Below, in pieces: positions 528 to 47,991 of a stretch of DNA of 64,000 nt. Positions within the stretch are counted from its first letter, which is position 1. The number at the start of each line of letters is the position of its first letter. The DNA is from Octopus sinensis (taxonomy: Eukaryota). The stretch covers positions 66,650,001 to 66,714,000 of the forward strand of contig NC_043010.1 in the NCBI RefSeq assembly GCF_006345805.1. The letters run 5' to 3'. The notes under the pieces were generated by a model. The model was not told where the DNA came from. It searched no databases and saw nothing but the letters and a program-made list of their open reading frames with translations. The position numbers and the translations under genes were made by a program.

Positions 528-690
528 CTGAGCAATTTCCCACAGCACAACATTAACGAACTACCACCATGGGAGACACTGTTTGAAGCCTCCAATTATT
601 GTTGCCTCTTCAACTCTGACCTGCAACTCAGCCATATAAAGTTTCTGCCTGGGAACAGTAAAATAGATAATACACTGGCAAACACAGAAG
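528..690 (+). CDS. SLF2: SLF2 exon ([55 protein letters not shown])
   Basis: Acceptor ttcttatttcag, donor G|gtgagg, open frame, phase 1 matches the next exon. Confidence 0.75.
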
Positions 691-3600
691 GTGAGGGGAC
701 GGGGTTTCACATTAATGGTTTGCTGTATTTTTGTGGTGTGGTATGTGTGTTCTTGTGTGTGAGGTGAAGAGGTCTTTAAGCTAGTGTTATGTTCCTAAAA
801 CTAGCTTAATGATAACTAAGTTATTTTACTAAATTCTTTGTTATATTTAAAGTAATTGAAAGAAACACAGAGCATCTCAACAGAAATATGGTAATGAAAG
901 GGTTAAAATATATAAAAGAGAAACAATTCTTAACCCTTTCGATACCAACCCGGCTGAAACCAACTCTGGCTCTGTGTACAAATGTCTTGTTTTCATAAGT
1001 TTTGAATTAAAATCTTCCACCAAACCTTAGTCACAGTTTATGTCCCTAACACTAGCTGAATGATAACCAAGTTATTTTACTAAATTCTGTGTTATATTTA
1101 AAATTAATTGAAAGAAACTCAGAGCATCTCAAAAGAAATATGGTAACAAAAGGGTTAAAAAGATATGTACTGGAGTCGATTTGTTCAACTGAAAAATTTG
1201 TCAAGGTGGTACCACAGTCTTATGACTGAAACAAGGAATGGGTAAAGATGTTAGTAAGAGTGAGAGAGGTAATAGCAGGAAGGTGGTTCTGGGTGAATGA
1301 GTGAGTGGCTGAGTTCGCTCACTTGCTCTTTCTTTCTTTCCTTCCTTCTTTCTCTCCTTTCTTTCTTTCTTTCTTTCCTTCTTTGTTTCCTTCTTTCTTT
1401 CTTTCCTTCTTTCTTTCTTTGCTTCTTTCTTTCCTTCATTCCTTCTTTCTTTCATTTCTTCTTTCCTTCTTTCTTTCTTTCCTTCATTCCTTCTTTCATT
1501 CATTCCTTCTTTCCTTCTTTCTTTCCTTCCTTCTTTCTTTCTTTCCTTCTTTCTTTCTTCTTTCTTTCTTTCTTCTTTCCTTCCTTCCTTCTTTCTTTCT
1601 TTCCTTCTTTCTTTCCTTCTTTCTGTCCTTCTTTCCTTCCTTCTTTCTTTCTTTCCTTCTTTCTTTCCTTCCTTCTTTCCTTCCTTCTTTCTTTCTTTCT
1701 TTCTATGTCTGTCCTCAAATGAATAGTTTTGTTCATTCTTTGACATACTCTTCACTTAATTCATTGAAATCTTCTCAGGTACTGAGCAGCTGGAATTCAT
1801 CTTGAAGTCTGATATCCTGCGCATTGTGTGGTATGCCGTGTCCAACAAAAATTTGGTCCTTCGATGGCTGTTCTTCTTAAGTAGGTACCCACTGAATTCT
1901 ATTTTACTTCCTTTTCGTATTATTTTTTTTTTAATCCTAGATTACCTCATATATGGGTGGGGGTGGGGTGCTGAAAAGTTCCTGGCTTTGGGTAAAAGAA
2001 AATACAGGAGGGATCAGTGAATTATTTTATCCTACATATTCCCCTCTCTGATTCACATGCTTTGTTTTGTTTTTTTTCCTTTTTTTATTTGTTTCAGTCA
2101 TTGCACTATGGCCATGCTGGGGTACCGCCTTGAAGGGTTTCCATTGAATGACTTGACCCCAGTAGTTATTTTTTAAGCGTGTTATTTATTCTGTCAGCCT
2201 TTATTGCCGAACTGCCAGCTTATGGGAACATAACTAGTTACCAAGTACTGATAGGGAACAAACACAAAGGAGCACGTTTGCACACACACACACATAAGTT
2301 TCTGTCTACAAAAACCACTCAAGGCTTTGATTGACCGAGGACTGTAACAGAAGACACTTATCCGAGGTGCCATGTGGTGGGACTGAACCCAGAACCATGT
2401 GGCTAGGAAGCAAACTTCTTATTTCTTTACTGCCCACAAGGGGTTACACATAGAGGGGACAAGCAAGGACAGACAAACGGATTAAGTCGATTATATCGAC
2501 CCCAGTGCATAACTGATACTTATTTAATCAACCCCGAAAGGATGAAAGGCAAAGTCGACCTCGGCGGAATTTGAACTCAGAACGTAGCAGTAGATAAAAT
2601 ACCTATTTCTTTACTACCCACAAGGGGCTAAAGACAGAGGGGACGAACAAGGACAGACAAACGGATTGAGTCGATTACATCGCCCCCAGTGCGCAACTGG
2701 TACTTAATTTATCGACCCCGAAAGGATGAAAGGCAAAGTCAACCTTGGTGGAATTTGAACTCAGAATTTAGCAGTAGACGAAATACCGCTAAGCATTCTG
2801 CCCGGCGTGCTAACGTTTCTGCCAGCTCGCCGCCTTATGCACACTATATAATAGGCTGTGCAGTCATGTAATCATAACCGTACGAACGAATTCAATGCAA
2901 AAACAAATTGGTCGATTCCCTTAAATACGAAAAAATTCACATTACAGAAGGAATTCCTGGATTCAAGTAGAAGGGACCAAATGTAGAATCTCAGCAAAAT
3001 ATTAATATTCTTTTCTCCTCTAGGCACAAGGATCAAAAGTTTTGGGGAGGCGGGCAGTCGATTAGATCGACCCAGGACGCAACTGGTACTTAATTTAACG
3101 ATCCCCGAAAGGATGAAAGGCAAAGTCGAGCTCGGCGGAATTTGAACTCGGAACGTAACGGTAGATAAAATACCTATTTCTTTACTACCCACAAGGGGCT
3201 AAAGACAGAGGGGACGAACAAGGACAGACAAACGGATTGAGTCGATTACATCGCCCCCAGTGCGCAACTGGTACTTAATTTATCGACCCCGAAAGGATGA
3301 AAGGCAAAGTCAACCACGGCGGAATTTGAACTCGGAACATAGCGGTAGACGTAATACTGGTAAGCATTTCGCCCAGCATGCTAACGTTTCTGCCAGCTCA
3401 CCGCCTTCTTGCCACACAGCTGCATCTACACCAATTTTGAGATTTTAAAAGGCTGTCGTGTAAATTGTAGAATTAATGAGTTACATGTAGTTTTCAGATG
3501 AGAGATGAAACGAAGAAAACAAGTTTGATATTGGTTAATAAAATCAGCTTATCAAGGGGACTGACCCAATTCAGGAGTTTGGGAGCCTTTGTATGTTGGG

Positions 3601-6115
3601 AAATTCACTTAGATAAAACGGGTCCTTGGAAATGAAAAGGCTGGGAACAACTAGGCTAGATTATAGATGGAACCATGACTGGACAAATAACAAAAGACAG
3701 GGAAAGTGGTTGGGTCAGATCTTAGTACATATCAGCCCTCAAAAAGATGGAGACAAGTGGTAATGTCTGGTGGTGTTGAAAAGCAGTTAGTAGTGATAAT
3801 GGGTATGATCAAAAGCAGTCAAGCCATGACTATCCCATCTTAGTTTTCAGGAATAGCGTACTCTTGACTGTATTAGCTAAAGTATCCCTTTTTGTAGGAT
3901 GGCAGGGTGTACTTTGATGTAAATTTGGCTGTTATTTCTTGCTCGCCAATTGACCACATAGAAGCTTCCATGTCATGGTGTTTTATTTTTTTGTTTTTGT
4001 GTTTTTTTTTATGCTGATGGTTAGTGATGTATAAATGTATATATTTATACATTTATACACGCTCACTCTCACTCGTTCTCATCATAGCTGCCTCCAGGCT
4101 CTTAATTCCATCTCTTATTTGTAGTGTCTATTCACAATGACATCTCGGTGAGTGAAGCATGTTATCAGATCATACTGAATGCAATCCAGCTACAACTCTC
4201 ATCTTCCCGGACGAAAAACACGTGGGCACCAGACATTGCAGATATATTGCGCATATTCATAAACTATGGTGAGTAGCACATTATTTTTCTTCTTTTTTTC
4301 AAAAACTTTTTTCCTTTGTCAGAAAGGCATGTTGTTATTTAGTTCCTGGCTTATTCTTATCAGGTATTCCAGACATGGCCTTTCCACCTTTTAATGGTCG
4401 TGTTGGATTACATTATGTAATGTGTTTTTTTTTCTTTTGTATTTAAGATATTGTGTTTTGAGGCTGCTATATTTAAGATGATATTGTGTTTTGAGGTTGC
4501 TATGACTGCTATTTCTAGCAGATCTTGTGACTCATGAAAAGGCCTGTTGTTTAACTATCAGTCTAGTCTGATTGAGCAGAATTATGATGAAAGACATTAT
4601 TCCATCTATGTATTTTGTCTCAGTTGTTAGACTGCAGCTATGCTGGGGCTCTGCTTTGAAGAATTTAGTCAACCAAATTTGCCCCAGTGCTTACTTATTT
4701 TAAGCCTGGTGCTATTGACTCTCTTTTTGCCATATCGCTAAACTACTGAGACATAAACAAACCAACATCAGTTGTCAAGCAGTGGCATTGAGACAAAGAC
4801 ACACACACATGGCTTAGTGGTTAGAGCAGTGGACTCGCAGTCGAGGCATCGCAAGTTCAAATCTCAGACCAGGCAATGTGTGTGTTTATGAGCAAAACAC
4901 CTAAAATCCATGTGGATCCAATAGAAAGTAATGGCAAACTTCTGCTGACTCTTTCGCCACAACTTTCTCTCACTCTTTCCTCCTGCATCTAGTAGCTCAC
5001 CTGCAACAGACCAGCGTCCCATCCAGGTGGAGAACCTATACACCAATGAAACCAGGAAACTGGCCCCTATGAGCCAGCCCTGGCTTGAGAATGAATAAAC
5101 AGCAACAACAATGCACGCACGTAGACACACACATACATATATAAATATATATACACAATGAGCTTTTTTTTTAGTTTCTGTCTACCAAATCCACTCACAA
5201 GGCTATTGTAGAAGACATTTGTCTGCCCAAGGCTATTGTAGAAGATATTTGTCCAAGGAGTCCTGCAGTAGGACTGAACCCAGAACCATGTGGTTGGGAA
5301 GCAAACTTCTCACCACACAGCCATGCTTGTGTAACCCTTCCAATCTTTTCCCTAAGTGCAGAGGACATGGGACCTCGTTACCCATCACGTCCTTTTCTCA
5401 GATGAGACAGTGGCAGATTTGGCTGCTATTTCTAGCATGTTGAGATTCCTCTTTGTAATAAATGGGGTGTTTGTGTATGCATATAAAATAGTGTTTAAAA
5501 TTATTTTATGACTGAGAGGGCATCAGTAATGTACCTTTTGAAGTGGAGGCTTGACTGGGCCTGAATGATCACTCACGGTACCTAGGATAGCAGGTACTGT
5601 TGTTAAGCTGGTTGATGGGGTAAGTAACATTAACCAGCGTAAAGCCAGTAGATTGATGGAAATATTAGAGAGTTGGGCAAATAAGTAGCAAACAGAAGCA
5701 CTGCAATTGATGCAATCAATTAAAACCGTGAGGGCAATGCTCCAGCTTGGCCACAATCCAGTGACTCTAACCAGTAAAAGAATATATTGACTGAGCAGGT
5801 GTGTGTATGAATGTGTCGATATGTGGTTATTGAAAACTAGCTGGCCCTGTGTCAGCTAATTGTAGTATTTTATATAGAGATAAGGTACAAAATAAATCAC
5901 ACATACAAACATTCACATACTTCTCTTGTACACGCACACATACACACATATGCTCACACAGAATTGAAACACTGATTTTTCATTTCACCCCTTCCTTTTT
6001 CTCGTTACTATTACTTTTTCTCACTCCTTCTCAGTCAGGGCTACTACTCTCACTACTTCTCCTTCACTGAATTACTATTTTCTTTTCCCCTCCTCATTCA
6101 ACATGATTCTGGAAA

Positions 6116-6183
<68 letters not shown>

Positions 6184-6238
6184 TATATATATGTATGTAT
6201 GTGTGTATATATATGTATATATTCATATATATATGTAT

Positions 6239-6301
<63 letters not shown>

Positions 6302-6370
6302 AAGAGGGAATATTATTCCAAACTTACAGGGAAAAATTCAATTTAAAAATACTAAATCAAATTGCCCAAA

Positions 6371-6421
<51 letters not shown>

Positions 6422-9400
6422 TATATATATACACACACACATACACACACACAAATATTTAAACACACTATGCTTATTATCATATTAGGAGATGAGCATC
6501 ATTCATTTCCAATATTCTGCAGAAACATGTCTTGCCATGGGGAAATATCACCTTGCTGGGAAACAGGTGAGGGTTGGCAACAGAAAGGGCATCCAGCTGC
6601 AAAAAATCTGCCTCAATAAATTCCATCTGACCCATACAAGTATTGTAAAGTTGACATTGAAATGATGATTGTGTATGGGTGTGTTTTTTTGTGCTCGTAG
6701 TGATGGAAGGGACGTGTGTGAGTACATTGAATGAATATTCATTGACTCTTCTTCTTCTTACGGATCTTTATCTACTTGTTCTAGGTGCTCCAGTACATGA
6801 CCTTGTGCCCAACCAAGCGTTTCTTCGTTCCCTACCACTTGGGTAAGTAATTCCGTCTCTACTAGAATCTTCGGATCTTTACCTTTTGACATACAGATTT
6901 TTAAAATAATTTTTTGTAACTAAACACTTTCAAACTTCGGACACTGGTTAAAAGTGTCATATAAAACATCTTTTACTCTTAGCGTTTTTGAGAAAAAATT
7001 ATATTTAGGAAGTTATTTCATGTTAAAGTTGTTGTATTTCGGTAATTTCAACCAATCAACGACGTGTATTCAGCTGAATAAAATTACTGCTGTTGTGTGT
7101 CAACAAGAACTTCCGGCAGTGTATTTTTCGTTTGTCACTGTTATTTATGACAACCCTAACCCTAAAATCCTAACCCTAAAACCCTAACCCTAAAACCATA
7201 ACCCTAGAACCCTAACCCTAAAACCTTAAAGCTAAAACCAGTACAAACGCACGAACGATGTCGTAAATAACAATGAAAAATTAAATATACTCTGTCAATA
7301 GTTGTTGACAAACAACGGCAGTAATTTTATTCAGCTGAGTACACATCATTGATTGGTTGAAATTACTGAAATATGACAACTTTAATGTGAAATAACTTTG
7401 TAAATATAAGCTTTTCTCAAAAATGCTAAGATTAAAAGATGTTTTGAATGACACATTCTACTAGTGTCTGAAGTTTGAAAGTGTTTAGTTACAAAAAATA
7501 ATTTTTAAAATCTGTAGGTCAAAAGGTAAAGATCCAATGTCGTGCCATGTTGTAAAAATTGCTTAATTATAAACATTTATCTAAAATGGTGAAGGCCATG
7601 ATTTATCTCCCGCTGGCAGTGTAAACGAGAGTGTTTCTATGCACCAGTAAACTATCGCAGTATCATGTGTTCTAACACAACATCCACTTTTAAGCAGGGA
7701 TAAATATTATCTTTTGTTATTAATACTACTTCTGTCGCTAATAATTCATCGTCATCATTGTTTAACGTCCGTTTTCAATGCTGGTATGGGTTGGACGGTT
7801 TGATTGTGGTCTGGAAAGCCAGCGTCTGCACCAGGCTCCAGTCTGATCTGGCAATGTTTCTATAGCTGGATGCCCTTCCTAATGGCAACCACTCCAAGAG
7901 TGTAGTGGGTGCTTTTGGTGTTGTTGGCGTGAGGAAGGGTATCTAGCTGTACAAACATTGCCTGCTTTGTGTGTATGTGTGTGTACACTTGTCTTGAGTA
8001 TCTCCATCATACAAGTGATGTTATTTGTTTCCAATCTTCTTATTAGACGGTACAAACAAAGGGATTAAGTTGATTACATTGACCTCAGTGTGTAACTGAT
8101 ACTTAATTTATCGACCTCGAGAGGATGAAAGGAAAAGTCGACCTCGGCAGAATTTGAACTCAGAACATAATGGCAGACGAAATACCGCTAAGCATTTCGT
8201 AACGTTTCTGCCAGCTCATTGCCTATTTTGTTTCCAATCTTCTATGGGAAGCATATCTGACCCTGGTGAAATATTACCTTGCTCGGAAACAGGTGAGGGT
8301 TGGTGACAGGTAGGGCATCCAGCCGTGGAAAAATCTGCTCCAACAAATTCCATCTGAACTATACAAACATAGGAAAATGAACATTAAGTGATGATGATGA
8401 TGGTACTCGTACACCCTTTTCACCCAGTGGGTAAAGTACAGCTTAGTCTCTGACCATATAACACATTGTCCTAGTTTGGTTTACATATTACAGATGAATA
8501 ACAATGAAGATCTGACATAATCTGACCTTACTTGTTTTATAAATCAACCCTTTAGTGTTTAAACCGGCTATATCTGGCCCAAATATTCTCTCTCTCTCTC
8601 TTTCGGAGAGGCACAAGCACCTACACGTACATATACACACACGGCAGTAACTTCTACCTACCGAATTCAATCACAAAGCTCCGGTCAGCTCGGGGCTATA
8701 GTGAAAGACACCTACCCAAAGTGCCACGCAGTGGGACTGAACCCGAAACCATGTAGCCAGGAAGCAAGCTCCCTAACCACACAGCCATGCCCGCGCATAT
8801 TCAAACTGGCTAGATCTGGCCTCTCACACCTAACCTACATTGACATTCTAAAAATAAACACTCACATCATTGAAACCTCAAAGCTATAACATAATGCATG
8901 ATTAATTCAAAACAATTTGAGTGAGAATGTATTACATTTAACAGAGTAATCTGAACACTAAAGGGTTAAGGCTGTATTTCTCCTCCTCCTCAGGGCTCTG
9001 CAAAAACCCATCAACACAAATTGTAAGCAAACGAAGCAAGACAAATCAAGCACCACAGCATCATCTCCCAGCAATGATGATTCTGTGCAGCTTAAGGTTT
9101 CACAAGATTCTGCATCGGCCCCGAAACTCAGGAAATCTGATAAAGCACAGTTTAACAGCACCGGTTTGGTTTACGTCCTTTCCGTGTTAAGCTTCGTCCT
9201 TGACTCAAGGTGAGTGAGTACTAATCACAGTATTTGTTGTTGCTAATATAAATTATAATTCCATGACAATCGCTCTGTGTAACTGACCAATCAGAACACA
9301 GTTGATGGTAATCTTCTTAACCTGAGAAACATTTGTTTGATATTTTTTTAATAAATGTGCAGTAATAGTCATTAACCAGCTAAGATTTGATTAATCATGT

Positions 9401-9544
9401 GACAAGTTTTCCTTACCAACCAATCAGATCACAGCATTTCATTTTCTCCTTGTCTCCAGTAATATTTACATTCCTCAACTCCTCATCTGTTAACAGCAGT
9501 GACCTGCTTTCTGTTTTGCTTCACCATAACTAAATATAAGAACA

Positions 9545-9594
<50 letters not shown>

Positions 9595-10287
9595 GTGTAC
9601 TGTTCCTTGAAAAGTACTCCATCTGGTGAGAGATAAATATTATTTAATAAACACAATATGTGTATGTATGTGCTACCATTAGTTTCATGTGCTGGAAGCA
9701 TGCCAGACAGTGTTTTTAACACATCTGGTGTCCTAGCACAATCGTCAGATGCAGACATTTTAAAAACAGTTTGGCATGCACTCATGAAACTAATAGTATC
9801 ACATAAATACATATATTGTATTTATTAAATAATATATATATATATATTATTGTCAGTTTGTCACACTTTGACTCGATTTGAATTCACACCTTATATTTCG
9901 TTTCTCATGAGAATGTGAAAGGTGAGGATGGTTCATAGCAAAATAATAATCTGCTAAAATGATTCTGGTACCCTCCTTCGGAAGTATCATCTCACCTTGT
10001 ATGGTCTGCACATTATTTTTGATGCTACAGATATTTTGGAACCATGATTAGAAATGTTGTTGGGTTTCTTTTTTTTTTTTCTATCCTATTTATCTTCTAA
10101 TCTAATCTTTTCTTTCATTTCACAGACCAAATTATACAACAGACCAGCTCTCTGCCTTGTTTTTAATGTTGTGCAAAGTCCGGTTGGATATTCATATTGC
10201 TACGTAAGTGACAATGTTCTTTCTCTCTTTCTTTGTTGTTTAGTTCCTCCCCCTCCTCCATTCTACTCCCCTCATCAAATCAGTCTG

Positions 10288-10375
<88 letters not shown>

Positions 10376-13300
10376 CTTTTCATTTACAAAGGGATCCACT
10401 GGTCAAGAATTTGCAAGCTGTTCTCTCAAGAATCATCCAGAAATTTTCAGCTGAAGAATGGCCACAAACGGTAAGTGTGTATATATGTTTATGCATACAA
10501 TTATTTAATTGCTTATAATGCATGTGACAACACTGTTTTCCTCTTTTCTTCTGTCTTAGTGACAAGGGTCCTGAATCTTCAGATTCTTCACTCTACACAG
10601 CAATTGTGATTTTTACCAAAGTTTCCTATAATCTCTCCTGTCAAATATTTCTCCAGTTCTACAAGATGGCTGCTTACGATGGAGTCAGTAGGGTGGTGGT
10701 ATGTCTGTGTGTATGTGTGTATATATATATATACATAAAAAGCACCATCTGTTCGTGGCCGTTGCCAGCGCCGCCCCGACTGGCCTCCGTGCCGGTGGCA
10801 CGTAGAAGCACCCTCCGTTCGTGTCCGTTGCCAGCCACGCCTGGCCTCTGTGCCGGTGGCATGTAAAAGCACCATCCGTTCGTGGCTGTTTGCCAGCACC
10901 ATCTGGCGCCTGTGCGGGTGGCACGTAAAAAGCACCCACTACACTCGCGGAGTGGTTGGCGTTAGGAAGGGCATCCAGCCGTAGAAACACTGCCAGATCA
11001 GACTGGGCCTGATGCAGCCTTCTGGCTTCACAGACCCCAGTTGAACCGTCCAACCCATGCTAGCATGGAAAACGGACGCTAAATGATGATGATAATGATG
11101 ATGATATGTGTGTGTGTGTGTGTTAGTGCCTCCTTGACATTGTGTGACAGTTGTAAAACGATTGTCCTTGTCCAACAAGCAGTGTCATTCCTTTTCAGTA
11201 TCTCAATATCTATGAGAATGTATCTGGCCAGAGGGAAATATTACCTTGCTTGGAAACAGGTGAAAGTTGTCAAGAGAAACTCCATCTGACCGGTATTATC
11301 ACTGATTCCGTAAAGGGGTCAATGGTATATGGAGTTTACCAACAACCCCTATTCTACAAAGTGGTAGGGATGTGGAGGGTAGTCTTGTAGTTAGTTGTTG
11401 CTGTTGTTGTAATCTCAGAGATGAAGCCCTGCTATTGTTTATGATATTTTCCAGGCCATCAATCTGTCCATTGACCTGACCACATTGACCAGGGACCCCC
11501 ATAACATGCTCTTCCTCACACAGACCTTACCACACTGTCAACAGAGTGTTGAACTCAGGCAGAGACTGGCCACACTACAGCTGTATGTGATCACTGAACA
11601 GGATATATCCACTGTCAGCAAAGAAGATGTTAATGTGAGCATTCTATTATTTTATAAACTATTATTTTATCAATGAGAGAGAGAGTGTGTGTGAGGTGAT
11701 TGTGTGCACTATATCTGTGAGTCAATAAATGTTGCTTTGAACTGGTGTAATTCTAGACAAGATGAAGAACCATTTGTGTTTATATGAAGTGTGTCTGACT
11801 GGTTAAAAAGTGTACTCCCCAACCACACAGCTTCAGGTTCAGTCCCTATTTCTTTACTACCCATGAGGGGCTAAACACAGAGGGGACAAACAAGGACAGA
11901 CAAACGGATTAAGTCGATTATATCGACCCCTGTGCGTAACTGGTACTTACTTAATCGACCCCGAAAGGATGAAAGGCAAAGTCGACCTCGGCGGAATTTG
12001 GACTCAGAATGTAGCGGCAGACGAAATACCTATTTCTTTACTACCCACAAGGAGTTAAACACAGAGAGGACAAATGGATTAAGTCGATTATATTGTCCCC
12101 AGTGCGTAACTGGTACTTATTTAATCGACCCCCGAAAGGATGAAAGGCAAAGTCGACCTCGGCGGAATTTGAACTCAGAACGTAGCGGCAGACGAAATAC
12201 CGCTAAGCATTTCGCCTGGGGCGCTAACGTTTCTGCCGGCTGACCACTTCAGGTTCAGTCCCATTCTGTGTCACCTTGGGCAAGTGTCTTCAACTATACC
12301 TAAAACCTTGTGAATCGATTTCATAGACAGATGCTGAAAGAAGCATGTGTGTGTGTGCTTGTGTCTCCTTGTCTTGACATCACATGGTTGTTGTAAATGA
12401 ATGTCACTGTCATACAAGCTGTGTCATTCATGACCAGTATTCTGCAAAAAAAAAAAAAAATTCTGTTGGCCATGAGGAAATATAAACTTGCTTGGAAACA
12501 GCTGAGTATTGGAGATAAGGGTGTTTGGCTGTAGAAAATCTGCGTCAGTCAACTCTCTACAACCTAGGCAAGTGTGGAAAAGTGGATTTAAAAAAAAAAA
12601 AGAACCAATCTGCTTTGTATGCATATTTTCTACACTTGATGTATGTACACATGCTTGCACATGTGCACACTCATGCACATTCGCACAGATACACACTGGC
12701 TAGGCTTAGCTTAGTTTGAGGCCTTCAGCTTGCAGTGGAGTCACAGAGACATTCATGACATACTGTATGCCAGATTTTTTTTTTGTGCATCTGTTGCAGT
12801 CAAATGCCACAGCTTGAGGTCTCCACTTGTGATCTGCCTGTTTATTCCTTAATATTGTCTAACCACCTTTGCCTTTGTTCAGCTTGCCTCCTCTTTCCCC
12901 CACCCTCCTCATTTTCTTGAAGCAAAGCTTTTTTTGCAAGACTGCTGGATCATGTTACACAGCCACTTCTTCCATCTTCTGATTTGTGATATGTTGTTTG
13001 GTGGTGATTGCCCAGAGAATGTGTTGTGCGATTTGTAATGTGTTGTTGAGTGGTTGATTGTGTAAATATTTGTTGTTGTTTTTGTATTAATTTCATCATA
13101 CCATTTCTATAATTCCCACAGATTTCTCAATTATTTTGTCTGTTTCCTCACCTGAAATCATTTGCCCAGCAAAAGCTCAGCACCCTCTCTGTAAGCGTCG
13201 ACTTACTCAGTATTGCAGTTGGTGGAAGCTCCTTTCAGAAATCTGACCGGGTAAGCTTATCCTTCATTTATTCTCGTCCTTAGCTGGCAGATTGACAGGA

Positions 13301-16300
13301 TAAGTTTTGAGTTCAAATCCTGTTGAAGTCAACTTTGTTTTTTTATCCTGGGGTCAATAAAATAAAGTACAAATCCAGTCCTACAGTTGATTTACTTTTC
13401 CTACAAAGTATCTGAGATGTGAATGAAATTGTGATTAAAGACCAAGACATCTATTCTTTCTCTGCTTTTTGTCGTTGACCTGAGGCTATGCTGAAGCATT
13501 AGTAGTGGCTGTGTGGTAAGTAGCTTGCTTACCAGCCACATGGTTCTGGGGTCATTCCCACTGCGTGGCACCTTGGGCAAGTGTCTTCTGCTATAGCCTC
13601 GGGCTGACCAAAGCCTTGTGAGTGGATTTGGTAGAGTGAAACTGAAAGAAGCCCGTCGTATATATGTATATATATATGTGTGTGTGTGTGTATGTTTGTG
13701 TGTCTGTGTTTACCCCCCTGCAACATCGTTTGACAACCAATGCTGGTGTGTTTATGTCCCCGTAACTTAGCGGTTCGGCAAAAGAGACTGATAGAATAAG
13801 TACTAGGCTTACAAAGAGTAAGTCCTGGGGTTGATTTGCTCGACTAAAGGTGGTGCTCCTGCATGGCCACAGTCAAATGACTGAAACGAGTAAAAGACTA
13901 CCAATAAGGGGCTTTCATCTGTCAAGTTTAACCATGCTGCTTCTCATACACAGGCTTAGGCAAGTCTTTTTGTTTTTTGTTAGGGAGACTAGCAGTTACC
14001 TATGCATGCTGGCCTTCCTTCTATATGCCCATGATGTTTATCAGAGGGGAAGGTCATCAACATGTGCACTGTTTGTTGCTGGATAAGGAGAACAGTTTCC
14101 AATGCATGTTGTAAAGTATATGGCATATATATTAATCAAAGGACATACTAAGTATGACTACCTGCTGGAAATAACAGTCAAAACTCTTACTTAAATCACC
14201 AAAATACACTGATAATGAATAACTACAGGAATCAACCGTCCAAAGACAAACGGGCTAAGACATTCTTTCAGCATAATTCAAGTATTTGGACTCATGTCGA
14301 CCGGTTTCTGGACTGGCATTATAGCCTCACCTTCCTCAGCATGCATTACCATGATGGAGTGCGCCAACCCGTTACATTGAAGTTTGCGCTGCAACTGATT
14401 CGTTTTGACAGCCACCAGTGTGAGAATAATTTCAATACGGAACATATAATTCACGAGAAAATATTTGTGAAGATATCGGCACATAAAAAGCACCATCCGA
14501 TCGTGGCCATTTGCCAGCGCCGTCTGGCACGTAAAAAGCACCCACTACACTCACGGAGTGGTTGGCGTTAGGAAGGGCATCTAGCCGTAGAAACATTGCC
14601 AGATCAGACTGGGCCTGGTGCAGCCTTCTGGCTTCCCAGACCCCTGTTGAACCGTCCAACCCATGCTAGCATGGAAAGCGGACGCTAAATGATGATGATC
14701 ATCATCATCATTGACTCTATTATTATTATTATTATTACACTAGATAATAATAGAGTCAATGATTTATTTGGAAGTATTTTCTCCATATTATATATGTATA
14801 TATATATGCAAAGTTTAGCTTAGTTACACTATGTTTGTGATGTATTTCAACTGCTAAAAGGCAAATTTATTGTAGTTACCATAGAGAAAATATTTCTCTT
14901 ATGGTAAAAAGGTGTGACAGCACCCTATTTGTTCAGTGTTGCCATCTCTCAGGAATCCCAGACATCAATGTTTCAAGCTAGTTGGCTTTTATCAATGGGA
15001 GATACTTATGAGAGGCAACTCTGAACAAATTTTACAGAAGGTGTAGCTTTATATAAAATGCAGTCAACAACATTGACTGCTTTGCATTGGTAGATTGCCT
15101 GATCATGGAAAATAACAAAATATTAACGCCAACACACACACTTCTCTGCTCTGAGATTAGTGCATTAACCTGTTGATTGTGTTTCTGTCCTCCTTCTGCA
15201 CAATCTTTCTTAGAAGCTCAAGAGTCATGAGTCAAGCTTAAACACAAGACTGAAAATAACCCCAAGTATTTCCTGTAATAATATTTGAATGATACTTACT
15301 TCCATCTCTCTCTCTCTTTTTCTTTCATGCGTTTCCATCATCAGGAAAACTTGCAGCAGGTTATGCACGAGGTGATGCAGTTATCTGAATGTCTTCGAGA
15401 CAATGGAAGAACTGTTGCCTGCTCTGTGGTATGTTGTTACAATTCTCATTTGCTCTTCTATTTTTCTCTTGCGTGTTCGTTACTATCATTGTCATCCTCT
15501 GCCTCTTTGTTAATTAATTGCAGCTTGTTAAAAAAAAATAACCATAGGCATAGTTGGACTGTGTGGTAAGAAATTTGGTTCCCAACCACATGTTTCAGGG
15601 TTCAGTCCCACTGCATGGCACCTTGGGCAAGTGTCTTTTAACATAGCCTCAAACTGACTAAAGCCTTGTGAGTGGATTTGGTAGACAGAAACTGAAAGAA
15701 GCCTGCCTTATATATATATATATAAATAAATGCGCCCTTAAGGCCTAGACAGGCTCATGGGCCCGGTTTCCTGGTTTCTATGGCGTATGTGTTCCCCAGC
15801 TGGACGGGACGCCAGTCCATCGCAGCGTTACTCATTTTTGCCAGCTGATTGGACTGGAGCAACGTAAAATGAAGTGTTTTGCTCAAGAACACAACGCGTC
15901 GCCCCATCCAGGAATCGAAACCACAATTTATGATCATGTTGCAAACACCCTAACCACTAAGCCATGCGCTTCCACATATATATATGCACACTTTTGTGTC
16001 TTTGTGTCTGTCCTTCCATCAACGCTTGACAACTGGTGTTGGTTTGTTTATATCCTTGTAACTTCTGGTAAATGGAAACTGATAGAAGTGCCAGACTTTA
16101 AAAAAAAAAGTACTGGGGTCGATTTGTTCAGCAAAAAATTCTTAATTTGTCTTCTTTCCTTTTGTTTGGTTGACTTCAACATTATTCAAAACTGTTTACC
16201 TCTTCGCAATACAAGTATAGTGTTGATGATTTAAAGCTGTTGTATCTTGCCCCAACTGTGCTGCACAGTTTACTATTCCAGGTGCAGTTGTGGCTGTGTG

Positions 16301-18489
16301 GTTAAGAAGTCTGCTTCGTAACAATGTGGTTTTGAGTTCAGTGCCATTGCACTGCACCTTGCGCAGGTGTCTTCTGCTATAACCTTAGACCAACCAAAGC
16401 CTTGTGAATGGATTTGGTGAAAAGAAACTGCAAGAAGCCAATTGCACAGATATCTGTGTGTGTATGTATGTATGAGGGAATGAGTGCAAAATGTAGACTA
16501 CATAGGTGGAATAAGTTTTAACAAATGTGCTGTGCATGAGAAGACCCGGCAGGACAAGTGAGACCATAACCCGTGGCCTCTACATGGGATGTAGCCAGTC
16601 CACTTATGCATACCTTTCCTTCTTGGGACACAAAACTCTACTTGTGAAGACCTGTTGAGGCAAGTGAAAATCAAAAAATCGAAATTGCAGCTGTGATACC
16701 AGTGCCGGTGGTACGTAAGAGAACCATCCGAATGTGGCCGTTGCCAGCACCGCCCCGATTGGCCTCGTGCCGGTGGCACGTAAAATGCACCAATCCGACC
16801 ATGGCCGTTGCCAGCCTCGCCTGGCACATGTGCAGGTGGCACGTAAAAAGCACCCACTACACTCACGGAGTGGTTGGCATTAGGCAGGGCATCCAGCCGT
16901 AGAAACATTGCCAGATCAGACTGGGCCAGGTGCAGCCTTCTGGCTTCCAAGACCCCAGTTGCACCGTCCAACCCATGCTAGCATGGAAAGCGGACGCTAA
17001 ACGATGATGATGATGATGATGATTAGTTTAATCCTTTAGCATTTAAACCTGCAATATCCGGCCCAATATTTTCCACCTGTTTTATGTTCAAACTGGTCAA
17101 GTTTGGCATCTACAGTGTTGCTTCAAAACCTCAAAGCTACGAAATAATGTATGATTAATTAAAAACAGTGTGGATAAATAAGCATTACATTTGACAGAGT
17201 TATCATCATCATCATCATCGTTTAACGTCTGTTCTCCATGCTAGCATGGGTTGGACGGTTCGACCGGGGATCTGGGAAGCCAGAAGGCTGCACCAGGCTC
17301 CAGTCTTATCTGGCAATGTTTCTACAGCTGGATGCCCTTCCTAACGCCAACCACTCCGTGAGTGTAGTGGGTGCTTTTTACGTGCCACCTGCACAGGTGC
17401 CAGGCGAGGCTGGCAACGGCCATGGTTGGATTGGTGCATTTTACGTGCCACTGGCACGGAAGCCCGTCGAGGCGGCACTGGCATCGGCCACAAGTCGGAT
17501 AGTGCTTTTTACGTACCACCAGTCCAGGGGTCCTGGCATCTGCCAGGTGCCACTGAATGCTAAAGGGGTGATGCTTAAAATGAAGGCACAAAGAGTTTTG
17601 ATGTCTTGCACGTGTGTGTGAGTGTCGTCTAGACATTCATGTGACGGTTGTCAATGATGGTGATGGTCAGCATTCTTATTGTGCAAGGTTGTTCATTCCC
17701 AGTTTTTCGTGAAAACATTGTCTAGCTATGGAGAAATATTATTTTGCTTCGAAACAGGCGAGGGTTGGTAACAGGAAGGGCATTTGAAAAATGTAGGGAA
17801 AACTTGACTCGACAAGCTTTGTCTGACCCCATGCAAGCATAGGAAAGTGGATGTTAAACGATGATTTTCCTCTTGATGTTCCAGGTGAAAAACAAGCTGG
17901 TGATTCTCAGCAACCGATGGAAGATATTCTTGGAAACAATTGGATTAACTCAGGTAAACATCAGTAACTGTTCACCCCCCTCCCCCCACACACACCTCCC
18001 ACATACCCCACCTCTCCCACATCCCCACATCCCCACCTCTCCCACATCCCCACCTCTCCCACCTCCCCCACCTCTCCCAGTTAACACTCTCAGAGTGCAA
18101 GAGGTCATTTCTATTGCTTTCATTACAACCATGACCACCACTATTATTACTACTACTACTACTGCTACCACTAACACTACAATTACTATTGCTACCATTT
18201 GCTTCACCGCCACTGCCACCATGCTACTACAACTATCCCACACCACCAACACCGATTACAGTTTCTCTGCTATTCATCATTATTTTTCTCTCTCTCTCTC
18301 TCTCTCTTTCTATTCTAGAAAAATCTATTTGCATGGACCCGCATAGACCGGCCCCAGGAATCCATTGAAACGGCAGCAGAGGAGATGGCAATTTGTGAAG
18401 AGATTGTATTATCCGACTCTGACAGCACCGTCTGCAGTGATTCCGGTTCACTCTCAGACTGCAGTATATTCAGCCTGCCAGAGATCTAG
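528..18489 (+). CDS. SLF2: SLF2/FAM178-family gene (SMC5-SMC6 complex localization factor 2), 3-prime 12 coding exons; 5-prime part lies upstream of the window
   Basis: Exons 528-690, 1779-1880, 4125-4268, 6785-6842, 8994-9209, 10126-10203, 10392-10470, 11455-11634, 13122-13250, 15345-15428, 17885-17953, 18319-18489 all have AG/GT ends and matching phases, giving 1473 nt (490 aa + stop). Peptides are colinear with the human SLF2 C-terminal domain as I recall it: WLFFLMSIHND~[27 protein letters not shown]~[24 protein letters not shown]~HPHNLLWL, ELRQRL~QLRQCL, LRDNGR~IREDAR, VKNKL..RW~VKDLV..KW. Confidence 0.9.
930..1158. mobile_element. piggyBac-like MITE (TTAA flanks, CCCTTT...AAAGGG termini); copies at 776-906 (partial), 26098-26327, 62481-62710, 62727-62790 (partial)
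   Basis: TTAA-ccctttcg...caaaaggg-TTAA; about 225-bp body repeated at both ends of the window. Confidence 0.75.
1325..1702. repeat. (CTTT/CCTT)n compound tetranucleotide microsatellite
   Basis: Directly visible; source of the spurious F/S/L and K/E/R ORFs. Confidence 0.97.
1779..1880 (+). CDS. SLF2: SLF2 exon ([33 protein letters not shown])
   Basis: Acceptor cttctcag, donor A|gtaggt, 102 nt, WLF motif. Confidence 0.88.
2420..2840 (-). mobile_element. tRNA-derived SINE (head ggcggcgagctggcag..., B-box gagttcaaattcc, core cctttcggggtcgataaattaagtaccag), dimeric copy; many more copies, e.g. 3030-3410, 8045-8225, 11848-12240, 23960-24130, 28115-28331, 46000-46310, 48344-48557, 50395-50625, 54510-54900, 55850-56020, 61320-62200
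   Basis: Near-identical 200-250 bp units. Clear target-site duplications for some: taaggagcattgttttta at 28097 and 28332; agcctcttataccta at 48329 and 48558; ttcaggttcagtccc flanking the 11.85-12.24 kb insertion. Confidence 0.88.
4125..4268 (+). CDS. SLF2: SLF2 exon ([49 protein letters not shown])
   Basis: Acceptor tctcttatttgtag, donor G|gtgagt, 144 nt, W-x-P...N-x-G motif. Confidence 0.9.
6112..6435. repeat. (TA)n-dominated microsatellite blocks
   Basis: Directly visible. Confidence 0.95.
6785..6842 (+). CDS. SLF2: SLF2 exon ([20 protein letters not shown])
   Basis: Acceptor cttgttctag, donor GG|gtaagt, phase 1 to 2 fits both neighbours. Confidence 0.85.
6873..7535. mobile_element. Foldback/MITE-like element with ~270-bp terminal inverted arms and a central degenerate (CCCTAA)n tract
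   Basis: Starts ggatctttaccttttgac and ends gtcaaaaggtaaagatcc. Arms pair over their length; telomere-like tract at about 7150-7235; no clear TSD. Confidence 0.8.
8994..9209 (+). CDS. SLF2: SLF2 exon ([12 protein letters not shown]...[23 protein letters not shown])
   Basis: Acceptor ttctcctcctcctcag, donor AG|gtgagt, 216 nt open. Confidence 0.88.
10126..10203 (+). CDS. SLF2: SLF2 exon ([26 protein letters not shown])
   Basis: Acceptor tttcatttcacag, donor AC|gtaagt, 78 nt. Confidence 0.9.
10392..10470 (+). CDS. SLF2: SLF2 exon ([26 protein letters not shown])
   Basis: Acceptor ttttcatttacaaag (AAG), donor gtaagt, phase 2 to 0. Confidence 0.88.
11455..11634 (+). CDS. SLF2: SLF2 exon ([60 protein letters not shown])
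   Basis: Acceptor atattttccag, donor gtgagc, 180 nt, PHN-L motif. Confidence 0.92.
13122..13250 (+). CDS. SLF2: SLF2 exon ([43 protein letters not shown])
   Basis: Acceptor aattcccacag, donor gtaagc, 129 nt. Confidence 0.88.
13500..13890 (+). mobile_element. Second tRNA-derived SINE family (gtggctgtgtggtaag..., ggttcagtcccactgcgtggc...gaaactgaaagaagcc...(TA/TG)n...gcggtgctccagcatggccgcagtcaaatgactgaaac); full copies also at 42580-42995, 47330-47715, 50820-51200(-)
   Basis: A-box/B-box-like head, conserved body, many partial copies across the window. Confidence 0.85.
15345..15428 (+). CDS. SLF2: SLF2 exon ([28 protein letters not shown])
   Basis: Acceptor tttccatcatcag, donor gtatgt, 84 nt. 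Confidence 0.9.
17885..17953 (+). CDS. SLF2: SLF2 exon ([23 protein letters not shown])
   Basis: Acceptor cttgatgttccag, donor CAG|gtaaac, 69 nt. Confidence 0.9.
18319..18489 (+). CDS. SLF2: SLF2 terminal coding exon ([56 protein letters not shown])
   Basis: Acceptor ctttctattctag, phase 0, stop TAG at 18487-18489; KNLFAW corresponds to the conserved QLxxFW-like end of the domain. Confidence 0.82.
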   Translation, partial: KNLFAWTRIDRPQESIETAAEEMAICEEIVLSDSDSTVCSDSGSLSDCSIFSLPEI

Positions 18490-18963
18490 GGTTCGACCGA
18501 ACTTTTTGTTTGTGTTTTGTTTAGTTTCTTGTTATATTTTGTGTCTATTTATTAGTTTTACCCCCCACCCACCCCCACCCTTTATGTATTTTTTTTACAT
18601 TTGTACCTATTTATTTAATTCTTTGTAATATTTTATTTATCTTTCTATATTTTTTTTTGTTTTATATTTTTCTATACTTTACTATTTCACTTTGTATATT
18701 TATTTAGTTTTTTTTTAAAATGTTTAATTTAATCTGTATATATATATATGTATATATATATATATGTATTATTGCTCATTGTTTCATTGGTTGTTTTATG
18801 CATTTGCTGCTGACATAACAACTCACATGACCTCCACTGTTGTCTTAGCTTTGTCTCCAATGAGGAATGAGGAGGAAAAAAGCAAAGGAAAGGACATATT
18901 CCATTTGTTTGCCCTTCTGATAACATTCCAATGTTAACAAAGCTGTTAAATGGACTCCTCTAT

Positions 18964-19295
18964 CAGTCTCTGACATTACCGTTCACAGTCTGTGACATTA
19001 CTGTTCACTATCTCTAACATTACTGTTCACTGTCTCTGACATTACTGTTCACAGTCTCTGACATTACCGTTCACAGTCTCTGACATTACTGTTCACTATC
19101 TCTAACATTACCATTCACTATCTCTAACATTACTGTTCACAGTCTCTGACATTATCGTTCTCAGTCTCTGACATTACCGTTCACAGTCTCTGACATTACC
19201 GTTCACAGTCTCTGACAATACCGTTCACAGTCTCTGACATTATCGGTTACAGTCTCTGACATTACCATTCACTGTCTCTGACATTACTGTTCACA
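18964..19295. repeat. 22-bp minisatellite (cagtctctgacattaccgttca), about 15 copies, downstream of the SLF2 stop
   Basis: Successive units start at 18964, 18986, etc. Confidence 0.92.
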
Positions 19296-37800: not shown

Positions 37801-37828
37801 TGGTGTATACAGTTTCTTAAAATGAAAG

Positions 37829-47943: not shown

Positions 47944-47991
<48 letters not shown>

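What the first reader, a model, noticed from the sequence alone, without database searches (positions are those of the whole stretch)
18397..18423. SLF2 carries a DAXX-like SUMO-interacting motif in a C-terminal extension
Seen: the terminal exon extends about 50 aa beyond the conserved final Trp of the SLF2 domain and contains EEIVLSDSD followed by a Ser/Asp-rich tract. Known: the C-terminal SIM of DAXX is EEIIVLSDSD (hydrophobic core plus CK2-phosphorylatable S-D-S-D). Human SLF2 ends shortly after the domain and relies on the SIM-containing partner SIMC1 to reach SUMO-rich PML/viral sites. Inference: this lineage may have built SUMO targeting of SMC5/6 directly into SLF2.
Basis: partly seen in the sequence, partly recalled or inferred. 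Interest (0 to 1): 0.7.

Follow-up and report, generated by a model that had tools for sequence, protein, structure and literature searches.

The report
Conserved SUMO-motif-like tail on octopus SLF2
The last exon of the octopus SLF2 gene (a loader subunit of the SMC5/6 genome-maintenance complex) encodes a disordered, strongly conserved tail with a DAXX-like SUMO-binding-type motif, but the tail is an old feature of molluscs and their relatives, not an octopus invention, and SUMO binding is untested.

Summary
Window 18397-18423 (+) encodes EEIVLSDSD in the terminal exon (18319-18489) of Octopus sinensis SLF2. The window matches that genome at 100%, and all 12 exons in it match RefSeq XP_029644598 exactly.

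The gene is a true SLF2/Nse6-like gene: Pfam CANIN 112 bits, profile against human SLF2 E=6.5e-32, and Foldseek's only significant hit is 7T5P chain B.

The motif is retained in O. vulgaris, O. bimaculoides (EEIILSDSD) and Argonauta hians. Against Argonauta its nine codons carry 4 synonymous and 0 nonsynonymous changes. The last 30 residues are as constrained as the folded domain (pN 0.063 against 0.086), whereas the preceding 26 are relaxed (pN 0.30). AlphaFold2 predicts the whole tail to be disordered.

The interpretation needs correcting on two points:
- **The "extension" is not specific to this lineage.** All but one of the other lophotrochozoan SLF2 orthologues found have a 35-203-residue, mostly acidic tail. 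Thirteen of 19 end in LP[DE][LIV] at the C-terminus, as Octopus does (SLPEI).
- **The aliphatic core has three residues (IVL), not four.** It fails the canonical SIM consensus.

SUMO binding and the presence of SIMC1 could not be tested. A phospho-BRCT docking role is a credible rival.

The parts
528..15428 (+). Upstream SLF2 coding exons in the window (CANIN domain). Amino-acid-level matches at 528-692, 1781-1879, 4127-4270, 6787-6843, 8995-9210, 10127-10204, 10393-10470, 11455-11634, 13122-13250 and 15345-15428. Boundaries are good to about 2 nt. Residues 1-114 lie upstream of the window.
   Evidence: Exact peptide matches to O. sinensis XP_029644598/P0020. Pfam CANIN 112.1 bits, E=4.3e-32. 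AF2 model pTM 0.75, and Foldseek's only significant hit is 7t5p_B human SLF2, E=1.6e-11.
17885..17953 (+). Penultimate exon, [23 protein letters not shown], the last helix of the domain. ttccag acceptor, GTAAAC donor at 17954.
   Evidence: The orthologous exon in Argonauta is L001 13252-13320. 91% amino-acid identity, pN 0.038.
18319..18489 (+). Terminal coding exon: a 56-residue disordered tail plus the stop codon at 18487-18489.
   Evidence: Residues 433-490 of the 490-residue model have pLDDT below 50 and no secondary structure. The terminal exon is identical in the O. vulgaris genome.
18319..18396 (+). Weakly constrained proximal linker, [26 protein letters not shown]. It includes the 'final Trp' codon at 18334-18336 and a remnant (PQxxIET) of the PQ...IETVQASQSD element seen in other molluscs.
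   Evidence: 46% amino-acid identity and pN 0.30 against Argonauta, where the Trp itself is replaced (LFSST). Tails compared.
18397..18423 (+). The SIM-like element EEIVLSDSD: a three-residue aliphatic core, IVL, between EE and S-D-S-D. S-D-S-D fits the CK2 pattern S-x-x-D.
   Evidence: Present as EEIILSDSD in O. bimaculoides and EEIVLSDSD in Argonauta and O. vulgaris. 4 synonymous and 0 nonsynonymous differences. Fails the strict SIM regexes but passes hhh+acidic. CK2-like sites.
18424..18474 (+). Ser/Asp/Cys-rich spacer, [17 protein letters not shown], with further S-D and S-x-x-D sites. Its two Cys (plus the Cys at 18394-18396 just before the motif) are conserved in Argonauta.
   Evidence: It lies within the last 30 codons, which have pN 0.063 and 87% identity to Argonauta.
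18475..18486 (+). Terminal LPEI-COOH: the octopod form of the conserved [S/D/E]-L-P-[E/D]-[L/I]-COOH motif of lophotrochozoan SLF2.
   Evidence: LP[DE][LIV] occurs 13 times in 23,347 residues of 19 orthologues, and all 13 are within the last 12 residues.

Best explanation
Window 18319-18489 is the terminal coding exon of Octopus sinensis SLF2, the Nse6-like subunit that with an Nse5-like partner recruits SMC5/6. SHOWN: it encodes an intrinsically disordered tail. The last 30 residues of that tail are a selectively maintained composite of short linear motifs: C-E-E-I-[V/I]-L-S-D-S-D-S, then a Ser/Asp/Cys-rich spacer, then S-L-P-E-I-COOH. This tail is the short octopod version of an ancestral lophotrochozoan SLF2 tail built as a hydrophobic patch, an acidic or Ser-rich run and LP[DE][LI]-COOH. 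Human SLF2 lacks it. INFERRED (most likely mechanism): the tail is a recruitment handle. The EEI[V/I]L-SDSD element acts as a phospho-enhanced SIM of the DAXX type. The IVL strand would pair with the SUMO beta2 groove, and the flanking Glu, Asp and CK2-phosphorylated Ser residues would contact SUMO's basic rim. This would concentrate SLF2-SMC5/6 on SUMOylated chromatin or nuclear-body proteins. The terminal LPEI-COOH would engage a second, unidentified partner, giving bivalent and therefore selective targeting. Because the core has three rather than four aliphatic residues, binding is expected to be weak on its own and to depend on phosphorylation.
For: Gene identity: Pfam CANIN 112 bits; lophotrochozoan profile against human SLF2 E=6.5e-32; Foldseek's only significant hit is 7t5p_B, TM 0.65/0.76. 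Splicing and annotation: exact match to RefSeq P0020, with the same exon structure in Argonauta. Disorder: pLDDT below 50 across the whole terminal exon. Selection: last 30 codons pN 0.063 at pS 0.80, against pN 0.30 for the first 26 codons and 0.086 for the domain; the motif shows 4 synonymous and 0 nonsynonymous changes. Motif resemblance: DAXX SIM2 is IIVLSDSD. Its two Ser residues are CK2 sites that strengthen SUMO binding, and the motif alone is sufficient to send GFP to PML bodies (PMC8616421, PMC7708061). The pattern is rare in shuffles of the tail. Pathway logic: SMC5/6 recruitment through SIMs on its Nse5/6-like module is established for human SIMC1-SLF2 (PMC9708086). Canonical SIMs occur at matching positions in other mollusc SLF2 tails: Gigantopelta IIMLSDD at -20, Mytilus IIPISDS at -25, Haliotis ESEVRVL at -34.
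Against: The octopod core fails the hXhh/hhXh consensus and the SIMa, SIMb and SIMr patterns; single core mutations can greatly weaken real SIMs (PMC8616421). Many orthologues (scallops, oysters, Pinctada, Nucella, Solemya, Lingula) keep the acidic run and LPEL but have no canonical SIM, so the conserved function of the tail need not be SUMO binding. The conserved block is 30 residues long with three conserved Cys, more than a SIM needs. No binding, phosphorylation or localisation data exist. Multimer modelling with SUMO was not possible with these tools. Only octopods were sampled among cephalopods.
Confidence: 0.42

Rival explanations
1. The tail is a phosphorylation-dependent docking site for a BRCT (or similar phospho-reader) scaffold, not for SUMO. 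CK2-type or DNA-damage-kinase phosphoserines in S-D-S-D and S-L-S-D-C-S would serve as the first anchor. I-F and the terminal L-P-E-I-COOH would supply the hydrophobic second anchor. The tail would then tether SLF2-SMC5/6 to a multi-BRCT protein: an SLF1-like partner, or PTIP-, Brc1- or TopBP1-like proteins.
For: There are precedents in the same pathway. Yeast Nse6 binds the tetra-BRCT of Rtt107/Brc1, which recruits Smc5/6 to lesions (PMC10598736 discussion and PMC8651625). Human SLF1 tandem BRCT binds RAD18 S-pS442-S-pS444-D-I446-I447..L450, with the hydrophobic anchor at +4. In the octopus tail, Ser at -10 has I at +4 and F at +5, and Ser at -4 has the terminal Ile at +4. In the other orthologues that carry the motif, the residue just before L-P is almost always Ser, Asp or Glu. 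Tandem BRCTs commonly read C-terminal pS-x-x-hydrophobic-COOH, as in gamma-H2A. This rival accounts for the element that is conserved across phyla (acidic run plus LPEL), which the SIM model does not.
Against: The match is to a loose pattern and was found after the fact. The spacing is +4, not the usual +3. Acidic residues replace Ser in most species, whereas tandem-BRCT pockets generally prefer true phosphate. No BRCT partner sequence could be examined. This rival does not explain the specific E-E-I-[VI]-L run.
Confidence: 0.25
2. The tail works within the complex. It would be an acidic, possibly DNA-mimicking or autoinhibitory tail whose hydrophobic patch and LPEL terminus fold back on the SLF2-Nse5-like dimer or dock on SMC5/6 (for example SMC6 or a basic DNA-binding surface), regulating loading rather than targeting.
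For: Tails in other species are dominated by poly-Asp/Glu runs. Nse5/6 is known to inhibit the ATPase and modulate DNA binding (PMC13167486). The C-terminal end of SLF2 together with the N-terminus of SIMC1 forms the conserved patch that controls SMC5/6 localisation (PMC9708086).
Against: AF2 with the orthologue alignment gives no docking of the tail on the domain; pLDDT is below 50 throughout. However, the partner subunits were absent from that prediction. Human SLF2 functions without any tail.
Confidence: 0.18
3. One reading: cephalopods newly added a C-terminal extension carrying a SIM to SLF2, replacing a lost SIMC1.
For: The exact EEI[VI]LSDSD form has so far been seen only in octopods. 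Octopod SLF2 is unusually short at 604 residues and lacks the long N-terminal disordered region of other molluscs.
Against: The tail and its terminal LPEL motif are shared with gastropods, bivalves, a brachiopod and a nemertean. SIM-like patches are present in several of those tails. Loss of SIMC1 was not tested.
Confidence: 0.08
4. The resemblance is a chance result of the tail's composition, or the exon is an annotation artefact, and there is no function.
For: Acidic, Ser-rich tails readily yield SIM-like strings: a strict canonical SIM appears in 12% of shuffles of this tail. One O. vulgaris gene model ends differently, EEIVKKLID*.
Against: There are 0 nonsynonymous against 4 synonymous changes in the motif, and pN is 0.063 over the last 30 codons at saturated pS. 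The exon structure is conserved. The ORF is identical in the O. vulgaris genome. The alternative acceptor is absent from the window, which has CAT rather than CAG.
Confidence: 0.03

Closest known systems
DAXX C-terminal SIM2 (IIVLSDSD, residues 733-740), a CK2-regulated phospho-SIM
   Same: An aliphatic run immediately followed by S-D-S-D and preceded by acidic residues, in a disordered C-terminal region. The S-x-x-D CK2 consensus is present. Eight of the nine octopus residues align with EE-IIVL-SDSD if one aliphatic residue is deleted.
   Different: The core has three aliphatic residues (IVL or IIL) instead of four. It lies 28 residues from the C-terminus rather than at it. It is embedded in a longer conserved block with three Cys and a terminal LPEI. 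There is no homology to DAXX, so the resemblance is convergent. SUMO binding has not been shown.
Human SIMC1 N-terminal tandem SIMs in the SIMC1-SLF2 (Nse5/6-like) complex
   Same: The same pathway and logic: a SUMO-reading short motif in a disordered region of the Nse5/6-like module that localises SMC5/6 (PMC9708086, PMC12656486).
   Different: In humans the SIMs are tandem, N-terminal and on the Nse5-like subunit. Here there is a single SIM-like element, C-terminal and on the Nse6-like subunit. Human SLF2 has no C-terminal tail.
Human SLF2 / yeast Nse6 / plant SNI1 (CANIN-domain family)
   Same: The CANIN alpha-solenoid domain. Pfam, profile and fold matches are all strong.
   Different: Octopod SLF2 is short (604 residues), lacks the long N-terminal disordered region, and carries the 50-residue tail after the Trp, which human SLF2 lacks.
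BRCT-scaffold docking motifs of the SMC5/6 recruitment pathway: the Nse6 motif bound by Rtt107 tetra-BRCT, and RAD18 pS442/pS444-D-I-I bound by SLF1 tandem BRCT
   Same: Ser/Asp-rich disordered segments followed by hydrophobic anchors. One of them is carried by an Nse6-family protein. The +4 hydrophobic spacing resembles RAD18-SLF1.
   Different: The similarity is at the pattern level only. The yeast Nse6 motif is N-terminal and phosphorylation-independent. No partner was identified here.

Membership tests
SLF2 / Nse6-like (CANIN domain, PF14816) | Match to the Pfam CANIN model above its gathering score | tested here: met
   112.1 bits against a cut-off of 25, E=4.3e-32, profile positions 76-357 of 370. 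My first, incomplete exon model scored only 24.4 bits.
SLF2 / Nse6-like (CANIN domain, PF14816) | Sequence-profile similarity to experimentally characterised human SLF2 | tested here: met
   A profile of 14 lophotrochozoan sequences, including the window's, against the PDB: 7t5p_B E=6.5e-32; the next hit is E=0.14.
SLF2 / Nse6-like (CANIN domain, PF14816) | Alpha-solenoid fold superposable on SLF2 in the SIMC1-SLF2 cryo-EM structure | tested here: met
   AF2 pTM 0.75. Foldseek hit 7t5p_B E=1.6e-11, TM 0.65/0.76, the only hit with E<=0.001.
SLF2 / Nse6-like (CANIN domain, PF14816) | Forms a dimer with an Nse5-like partner and binds SMC6 | not testable with these tools
   No multimer prediction was available and no cephalopod SLF1 or SIMC1 sequence could be obtained.
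Canonical SUMO-interacting motif (SIM) | Four-residue core matching hXhh or hhXh (h = I/V/L) | tested here: not met
   EIVL is XhhH-type and IVLS is hhhX. There is no match to hXhh, hhXh, SIMa, SIMb or SIMr in any of the three octopod tails scanned; only 'hhh + acidic' matches. Consensus taken from PMC8616421.
Canonical SUMO-interacting motif (SIM) | Acidic or phosphorylatable residues flanking the core | tested here: met
   EE lies upstream and S-D-S-D-S downstream. S-D-S-D fits the CK2 pattern S-x-x-D.
Canonical SUMO-interacting motif (SIM) | Located in an accessible, disordered segment | tested here: met
   pLDDT below 50 and coil for residues 433-490 of the model, which is the whole terminal exon.
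Canonical SUMO-interacting motif (SIM) | Conserved relative to the surrounding disordered sequence | tested here: met
   Motif: 0 nonsynonymous and 4 synonymous changes. Last 30 codons pN 0.063, against 0.30 for the preceding 26 codons.
Canonical SUMO-interacting motif (SIM) | Direct SUMO binding that is lost when the core is mutated | not testable with these tools
   This needs a pull-down, ITC or NMR, or at least multimer modelling with octopus SUMO.
DAXX-type phospho-SIM | Aliphatic core directly followed by S-D-S-D with CK2-consensus serines | tested here: met
   IVL-SDSD; CK2-like S-x-x-D at tail position 26. DAXX sequence taken from PMC7708061 and PMC8616421.
DAXX-type phospho-SIM | Motif forms the extreme C-terminus of the protein | tested here: not met
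   The core starts 28 residues from the end, and 21 residues follow S-D-S-D.
Tandem-BRCT phosphopeptide ligand | Ser/Thr anchor with a hydrophobic residue at +3 (+4 for SLF1-RAD18), often at a free C-terminus | tested here: inconclusive
   Ser at -10 has I at +4 and F at +5. Ser at -4 has the terminal Ile at +4. The residue before L-P is Ser, Asp or Glu in nearly all orthologues that carry the motif. The pattern is loose and no partner was tested.

The most novel reading that the evidence does not exclude
Lophotrochozoan SLF2 (Nse6-like) proteins carry an ancestral C-terminal recruitment module that I did not find described in the few papers consulted: an aliphatic, SIM-like patch, an acidic or phosphorylatable run, and an invariant [S/D/E]-L-P-[E/D]-[L/I]-COOH terminus. 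Human SLF2 has lost it. If so, the SUMO-reading or phospho-reading function that targets SMC5/6 has moved between the Nse6-like and Nse5-like (SIMC1/SLF1) subunits during animal evolution. Octopods would have the most compact, DAXX-like version.
Probability: 0.3. Interest if true: 0.65.

Novelty: new variant of a known kind. Interest (0 to 1): 0.45.

Why it matters
How SMC5/6 is sent to particular substrates (DNA lesions, viral or extrachromosomal DNA, SUMO-rich bodies) is an active question. The readers known so far sit on the Nse5-like subunits: SIMs on SIMC1, and BRCT and ankyrin domains on SLF1. In yeast an external BRCT scaffold binds Nse6.

A conserved tail on the Nse6-like subunit of molluscs and their relatives, carrying a SIM-like element and a very specific C-terminal LPEL motif, would be a third arrangement. 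It would show that the targeting module can be redistributed between subunits.

It also supplies a short, defined peptide of 30 residues that can be tested directly for SUMO or BRCT binding. As it stands this is a comparative-sequence result without biochemistry. It is of moderate interest to SMC5/6 and SUMO specialists and limited interest beyond them.

Tried and rejected
- **The search for homologous proteins.** A query with the spliced last two exons and one with a 14-sequence profile returned nothing. They missed even the species' own RefSeq protein, so that index was unusable for this eukaryotic family.
- **Pfam and PDB on exon guesses.** Scans of hand-picked exon guesses and of raw three-frame translations of 3.6-9 kb gave no hits. 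SLF2 exons are too short and too divergent to detect one at a time.
- **My first hand-built gene model (292 residues).** It missed the exon at 10127-10204 and the 5' part of the exon at 13122-13250, and it scored just under the Pfam cut-off. It was corrected using P0020.
- **PDB search with the tail alone.** Zero hits, so the DAXX sequence was taken from the literature instead.
- **O. bimaculoides locus.** Not on record.
- **O. vulgaris alternative 3' end (EEIVKKLID*).** I considered whether it undermines the exon and rejected this for the window, because the acceptor AG is absent here.
- **Zinc binding by the three conserved Cys.** Rejected as a primary reading: there are only three ligands, with irregular spacing.
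- **FHA-type pThr docking.** Rejected because the only Thr in the block is not conserved in Argonauta.
- **LIR, CtBP (PxDLS) and PDZ class III motifs for the terminus.** None fits.


Full report
**What is at the coordinates.** Window 18397-18423 on the + strand reads GAA GAG ATT GTA TTA TCC GAC TCT GAC, which is EEIVLSDSD. It lies in frame inside a stop-free segment, 18319-18489, encoding [56 protein letters not shown]. The segment begins right after an AG at 18317-18318 that follows a long (CT)n/pyrimidine tract. The upstream segment 17885-17953 ([23 protein letters not shown]) runs from a ttccag acceptor to a GTAAAC donor. Both junctions are phase 0. Exactly 50 residues follow the Trp codon at 18334-18336.

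**Identity of the gene and source.** Short exon pieces gave no database signal. A phase-consistent hand-built model of 292 residues gave Pfam CANIN just under threshold, with human SLF2 (7T5P chain B) as the only PDB hit.
- An exhaustive phmmer search with that model returned 19 proteins. The best are Octopus bimaculoides SLF2 (XP_014776237; same 90% cluster as O. sinensis XP_029644598 and O. vulgaris CAI9733256) and Argonauta hians SLF2-like.
- All twelve exons in the window match O. sinensis P0020 residues 115-604 exactly.
- Window 1-18989 is 100% identical to O. sinensis chromosome CM016872.1.
- The window-encoded 490 residues score 112 bits on Pfam CANIN against a cut-off of 25.
- A 14-sequence lophotrochozoan profile hits human SLF2 at E=6.5e-32.
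- An AlphaFold2 model built with an 18-sequence alignment has pTM 0.75. Its only significant Foldseek match is 7t5p_B, E=1.6e-11, TM 0.65/0.76.

The gene is SLF2, and membership of the family is met on three independent tests.

**Is the exon real and the motif conserved?** The RefSeq O. sinensis and O. bimaculoides models both use the 17953^18319 junction. The Argonauta hians locus (L001) has the same intron position and a terminal exon of the same length. The O. vulgaris genome (L002) encodes an identical terminal-exon ORF.

The motif reads EEIVLSDSD in O. sinensis, O. vulgaris and Argonauta, and EEIILSDSD in O. bimaculoides. Nei-Gojobori counts against Argonauta:

| Region | Codons | pS | pN | Amino-acid identity |
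|---|---|---|---|---|
| Domain exons | 360 | 0.63 | 0.086 | - |
| Terminal exon, first 26 codons | 26 | - | 0.30 | 46% |
| Terminal exon, last 30 codons | 30 | 0.80 | 0.063 | 87% |
| The motif | 9 | - | 0 (4 synonymous, 0 nonsynonymous differences) | 100% |

- In the first 26 codons even the "final Trp" is replaced in Argonauta.
- The C-terminal 30-mer is therefore as constrained as the folded domain, while the linker before it is not.
- In shuffles of the 50-residue tail, an EE-hhh-SDSD-like pattern appears in 0.01% and hhh+[DES]4 in 1.5%.
- AlphaFold2 gives pLDDT below 50 and no secondary structure for the whole terminal exon, which suits a short linear motif.
- I could not consult RNA-seq junction reads for Octopus. 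For other molluscs, proteins of 764 and 1432 residues sit on 2.9-kb and 5.4-kb Logan contigs. Those contigs must be transcript assemblies, so the tails are present in mRNA there.

**The "extension" is not specific to cephalopods.** All but one of the other orthologues recovered have a C-terminal tail of 35-203 residues after the ...KQ[KR]SLF.W position, in most cases acidic and Ser-rich. They are Haliotis, Patella, Gigantopelta, Nucella, Pinctada, Mytilus, Saccostrea, Ylistrum, Argopecten, Solemya, Lingula, Lineus, Tubulanus and two transcript-derived sequences. The exception is the Lamellibrachia model, which stops 18 residues after the Trp.
- LP[DE][LIV] occurs 13 times in the 23,347 residues of the 19 sequences, and all 13 are within the last 12 residues. 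Examples are DDDSLPEL*, DEDDDLPEL*, DDDDELPEL*, SDDSLPEL*, DEDILPDI*, EDDLPDLLDHS*, EESLPELDIV* and QLPDVDVSAD*.
- Octopus FSLPEI* is that same motif. The octopod tail is a compact version of an ancestral lophotrochozoan tail.
- Human SLF2 ends 5-6 residues after the equivalent of ...LFAW. With no sequences from other phyla I cannot date the origin.

**Is it a SIM?** Reviews define the SIM core as four residues, hXhh or hhXh, flanked by acidic or phosphorylatable residues. The DAXX SIM is IIVLSDSD. Its two serines are CK2 targets that strengthen binding, and the motif is sufficient for PML-body localisation (PMC8616421, PMC7708061).
- The octopod element shares the SDSD flank, the upstream EE and the disordered setting.
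- Its aliphatic core is only IVL or IIL. It fails hXhh, hhXh, SIMa, SIMb and SIMr in the three octopod tails scanned.
- It lies 28 residues from the terminus, not at it.
- Canonical SIMs do occur at comparable positions in some other tails: Gigantopelta IIMLSDD at -20, Mytilus IIPISDS at -25, Haliotis ESEVRVL at -34.
- Scallops, oysters, Pinctada, Nucella, Solemya and Lingula have only a short hydrophobic patch (MEV, MDF, F) or none before the acidic run and LPEL.

What is shared across phyla is therefore a hydrophobic patch, an acidic or Ser-rich run and LPEL-COOH. The DAXX-like spelling is the octopod variant.

**Mechanism.** I favour, at about 0.4, a bivalent recruitment tail. The EEI[VI]L-SDSD strand would act as a weak, phosphorylation-enhanced SIM, and LPEI-COOH would bind a second partner. 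This matches the established logic that the Nse5/6-like module targets SMC5/6 through SIMs on human SIMC1 (PMC9708086).

The main rival, at about 0.25, is phospho-dependent BRCT docking.
- Yeast Nse6 binds the Rtt107/Brc1 tetra-BRCT.
- Human SLF1 tandem BRCT reads RAD18 S-pS-S-pS-D-I-I with the hydrophobic anchor at +4 (PMC10598736, PMC11551741, PMC8651625).
- The octopus tail ...[13 protein letters not shown] has Ser residues with hydrophobic residues at +4 twice, and the residue before L-P is Ser, Asp or Glu in nearly all orthologues that carry the motif.
- This rival accounts for the part conserved across phyla better than the SIM model does.

A role within the complex, as a regulatory or DNA-mimicking tail, gets about 0.18. 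AF2 shows no fold-back onto the domain, but the partner subunits were absent from that prediction. Chance or artefact is effectively excluded by the selection data.

**Limits.**
- There are no binding data and no multimer modelling.
- Only octopods were sampled among cephalopods. The 50%-identity representative library may hide squid sequences, and the one exhaustive search was already spent.
- The presence or absence of SIMC1 and SLF1 in cephalopods was not testable.
- The few papers I searched or read mention no SIM or C-terminal motif on SLF2, but that survey was not exhaustive.

**Verdict.** This is a new variant of a known kind: a SIM-like, phosphorylatable linear motif on the Nse6-like rather than the Nse5-like subunit, embedded in an ancestral tail whose LPEL terminus I did not find described in those papers. 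Interest is moderate, at 0.45.

Noticed in passing
window 18475-18486; P0001-P0020 C-termini: The SLF2 C-terminal motif [S/D/E]-L-P-[E/D]-[L/I]-COOH. LP[DE][LIV] occurs 13 times in 23,347 residues of 19 lophotrochozoan orthologues, and always within the last 12 residues. None of the papers consulted mentions it, and no known linear-motif class I tried fits it.
   Followed up: partly
window 18405/18406 and 25114-25137; L002 ~29142 and ~35917-35940: The O. vulgaris annotated model CAI9733256 (P0021) leaves the terminal exon inside the motif, after EEI at a GTATTA donor. It joins a 3' exon about 6.7 kb downstream that encodes VKKLID*. The acceptor is CAG in O. vulgaris but CAT in this O. sinensis window, so the isoform cannot form here by canonical splicing. 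If it is real in O. vulgaris, it would yield an SLF2 lacking both motifs.
   Followed up: partly
window 18346-18375 against other molluscs: Bivalve and gastropod SLF2 tails begin with a conserved PQ..(I/V)ETVQASQ(S/T)D element containing an S-Q site (the ATM/ATR-type consensus). In Octopus only PQESIET remains and the S-Q is lost (IETAAEEM).
   Followed up: no
L001 8290-9405 (Argonauta), equivalent to window 8995-9210: Argonauta SLF2 carries an insertion of about 300 residues of H/K/S/D-rich tandem repeats (HHKKDSSSSP-like and QHKDSTNS-like) inside the disordered loop exon of the CANIN domain. In the O. sinensis AF2 model that loop has pLDDT below 50.
   Followed up: no
P0020 (residues 1-114 lie upstream of the window): Octopus SLF2 is only 604 residues long and Argonauta's 909, of which about 300 are a repeat insertion. 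Full-length models from other molluscs mostly range from about 870 to over 3000 residues, and human SLF2 is 1173. The long N-terminal disordered region is missing in the octopods.
   Followed up: no
window 18898-19360: A 22-bp minisatellite of about 20 copies begins roughly 400 bp downstream of the SLF2 stop codon, presumably in the 3' UTR. There is no AATAAA within 1.6 kb of the stop; ATTAAA occurs at 20092 and 20303.
   Followed up: no
window 32962-35632: A 102-bp satellite with 26 copies and 97% matches. It creates long spurious ORFs on both strands.
   Followed up: partly
window 37826-41830: A tandem duplication with a period of about 1.67 kb, in two to three copies at up to 99% identity.
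   Followed up: no
window 21293-21757 (-): An ORF with a Tc5 transposase DNA-binding HTH domain (PF03221, E=8.8e-7): a pogo/Tc5-type transposon remnant downstream of SLF2.
   Followed up: partly
window 2338-3392, 8068-8206, 11765-12221, 45986-50546, 54559-54895 and elsewhere: Dispersed SINE-like repeat families (about 140-300 nt, 60-90% identity) are present in SLF2 introns and throughout the window. (TA)n, (CA)n and (CT)n microsatellites are frequent. There are no tRNA genes and no Rfam hits in the window.
   Followed up: no
window 17861-18346 (+): A 161-residue ORF reads through the last intron (a low-complexity Pro/Thr-rich translation). It is non-coding: the sequence is not conserved with Argonauta beyond the pyrimidine tract, and the annotated proteins splice it out.
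   Followed up: partly
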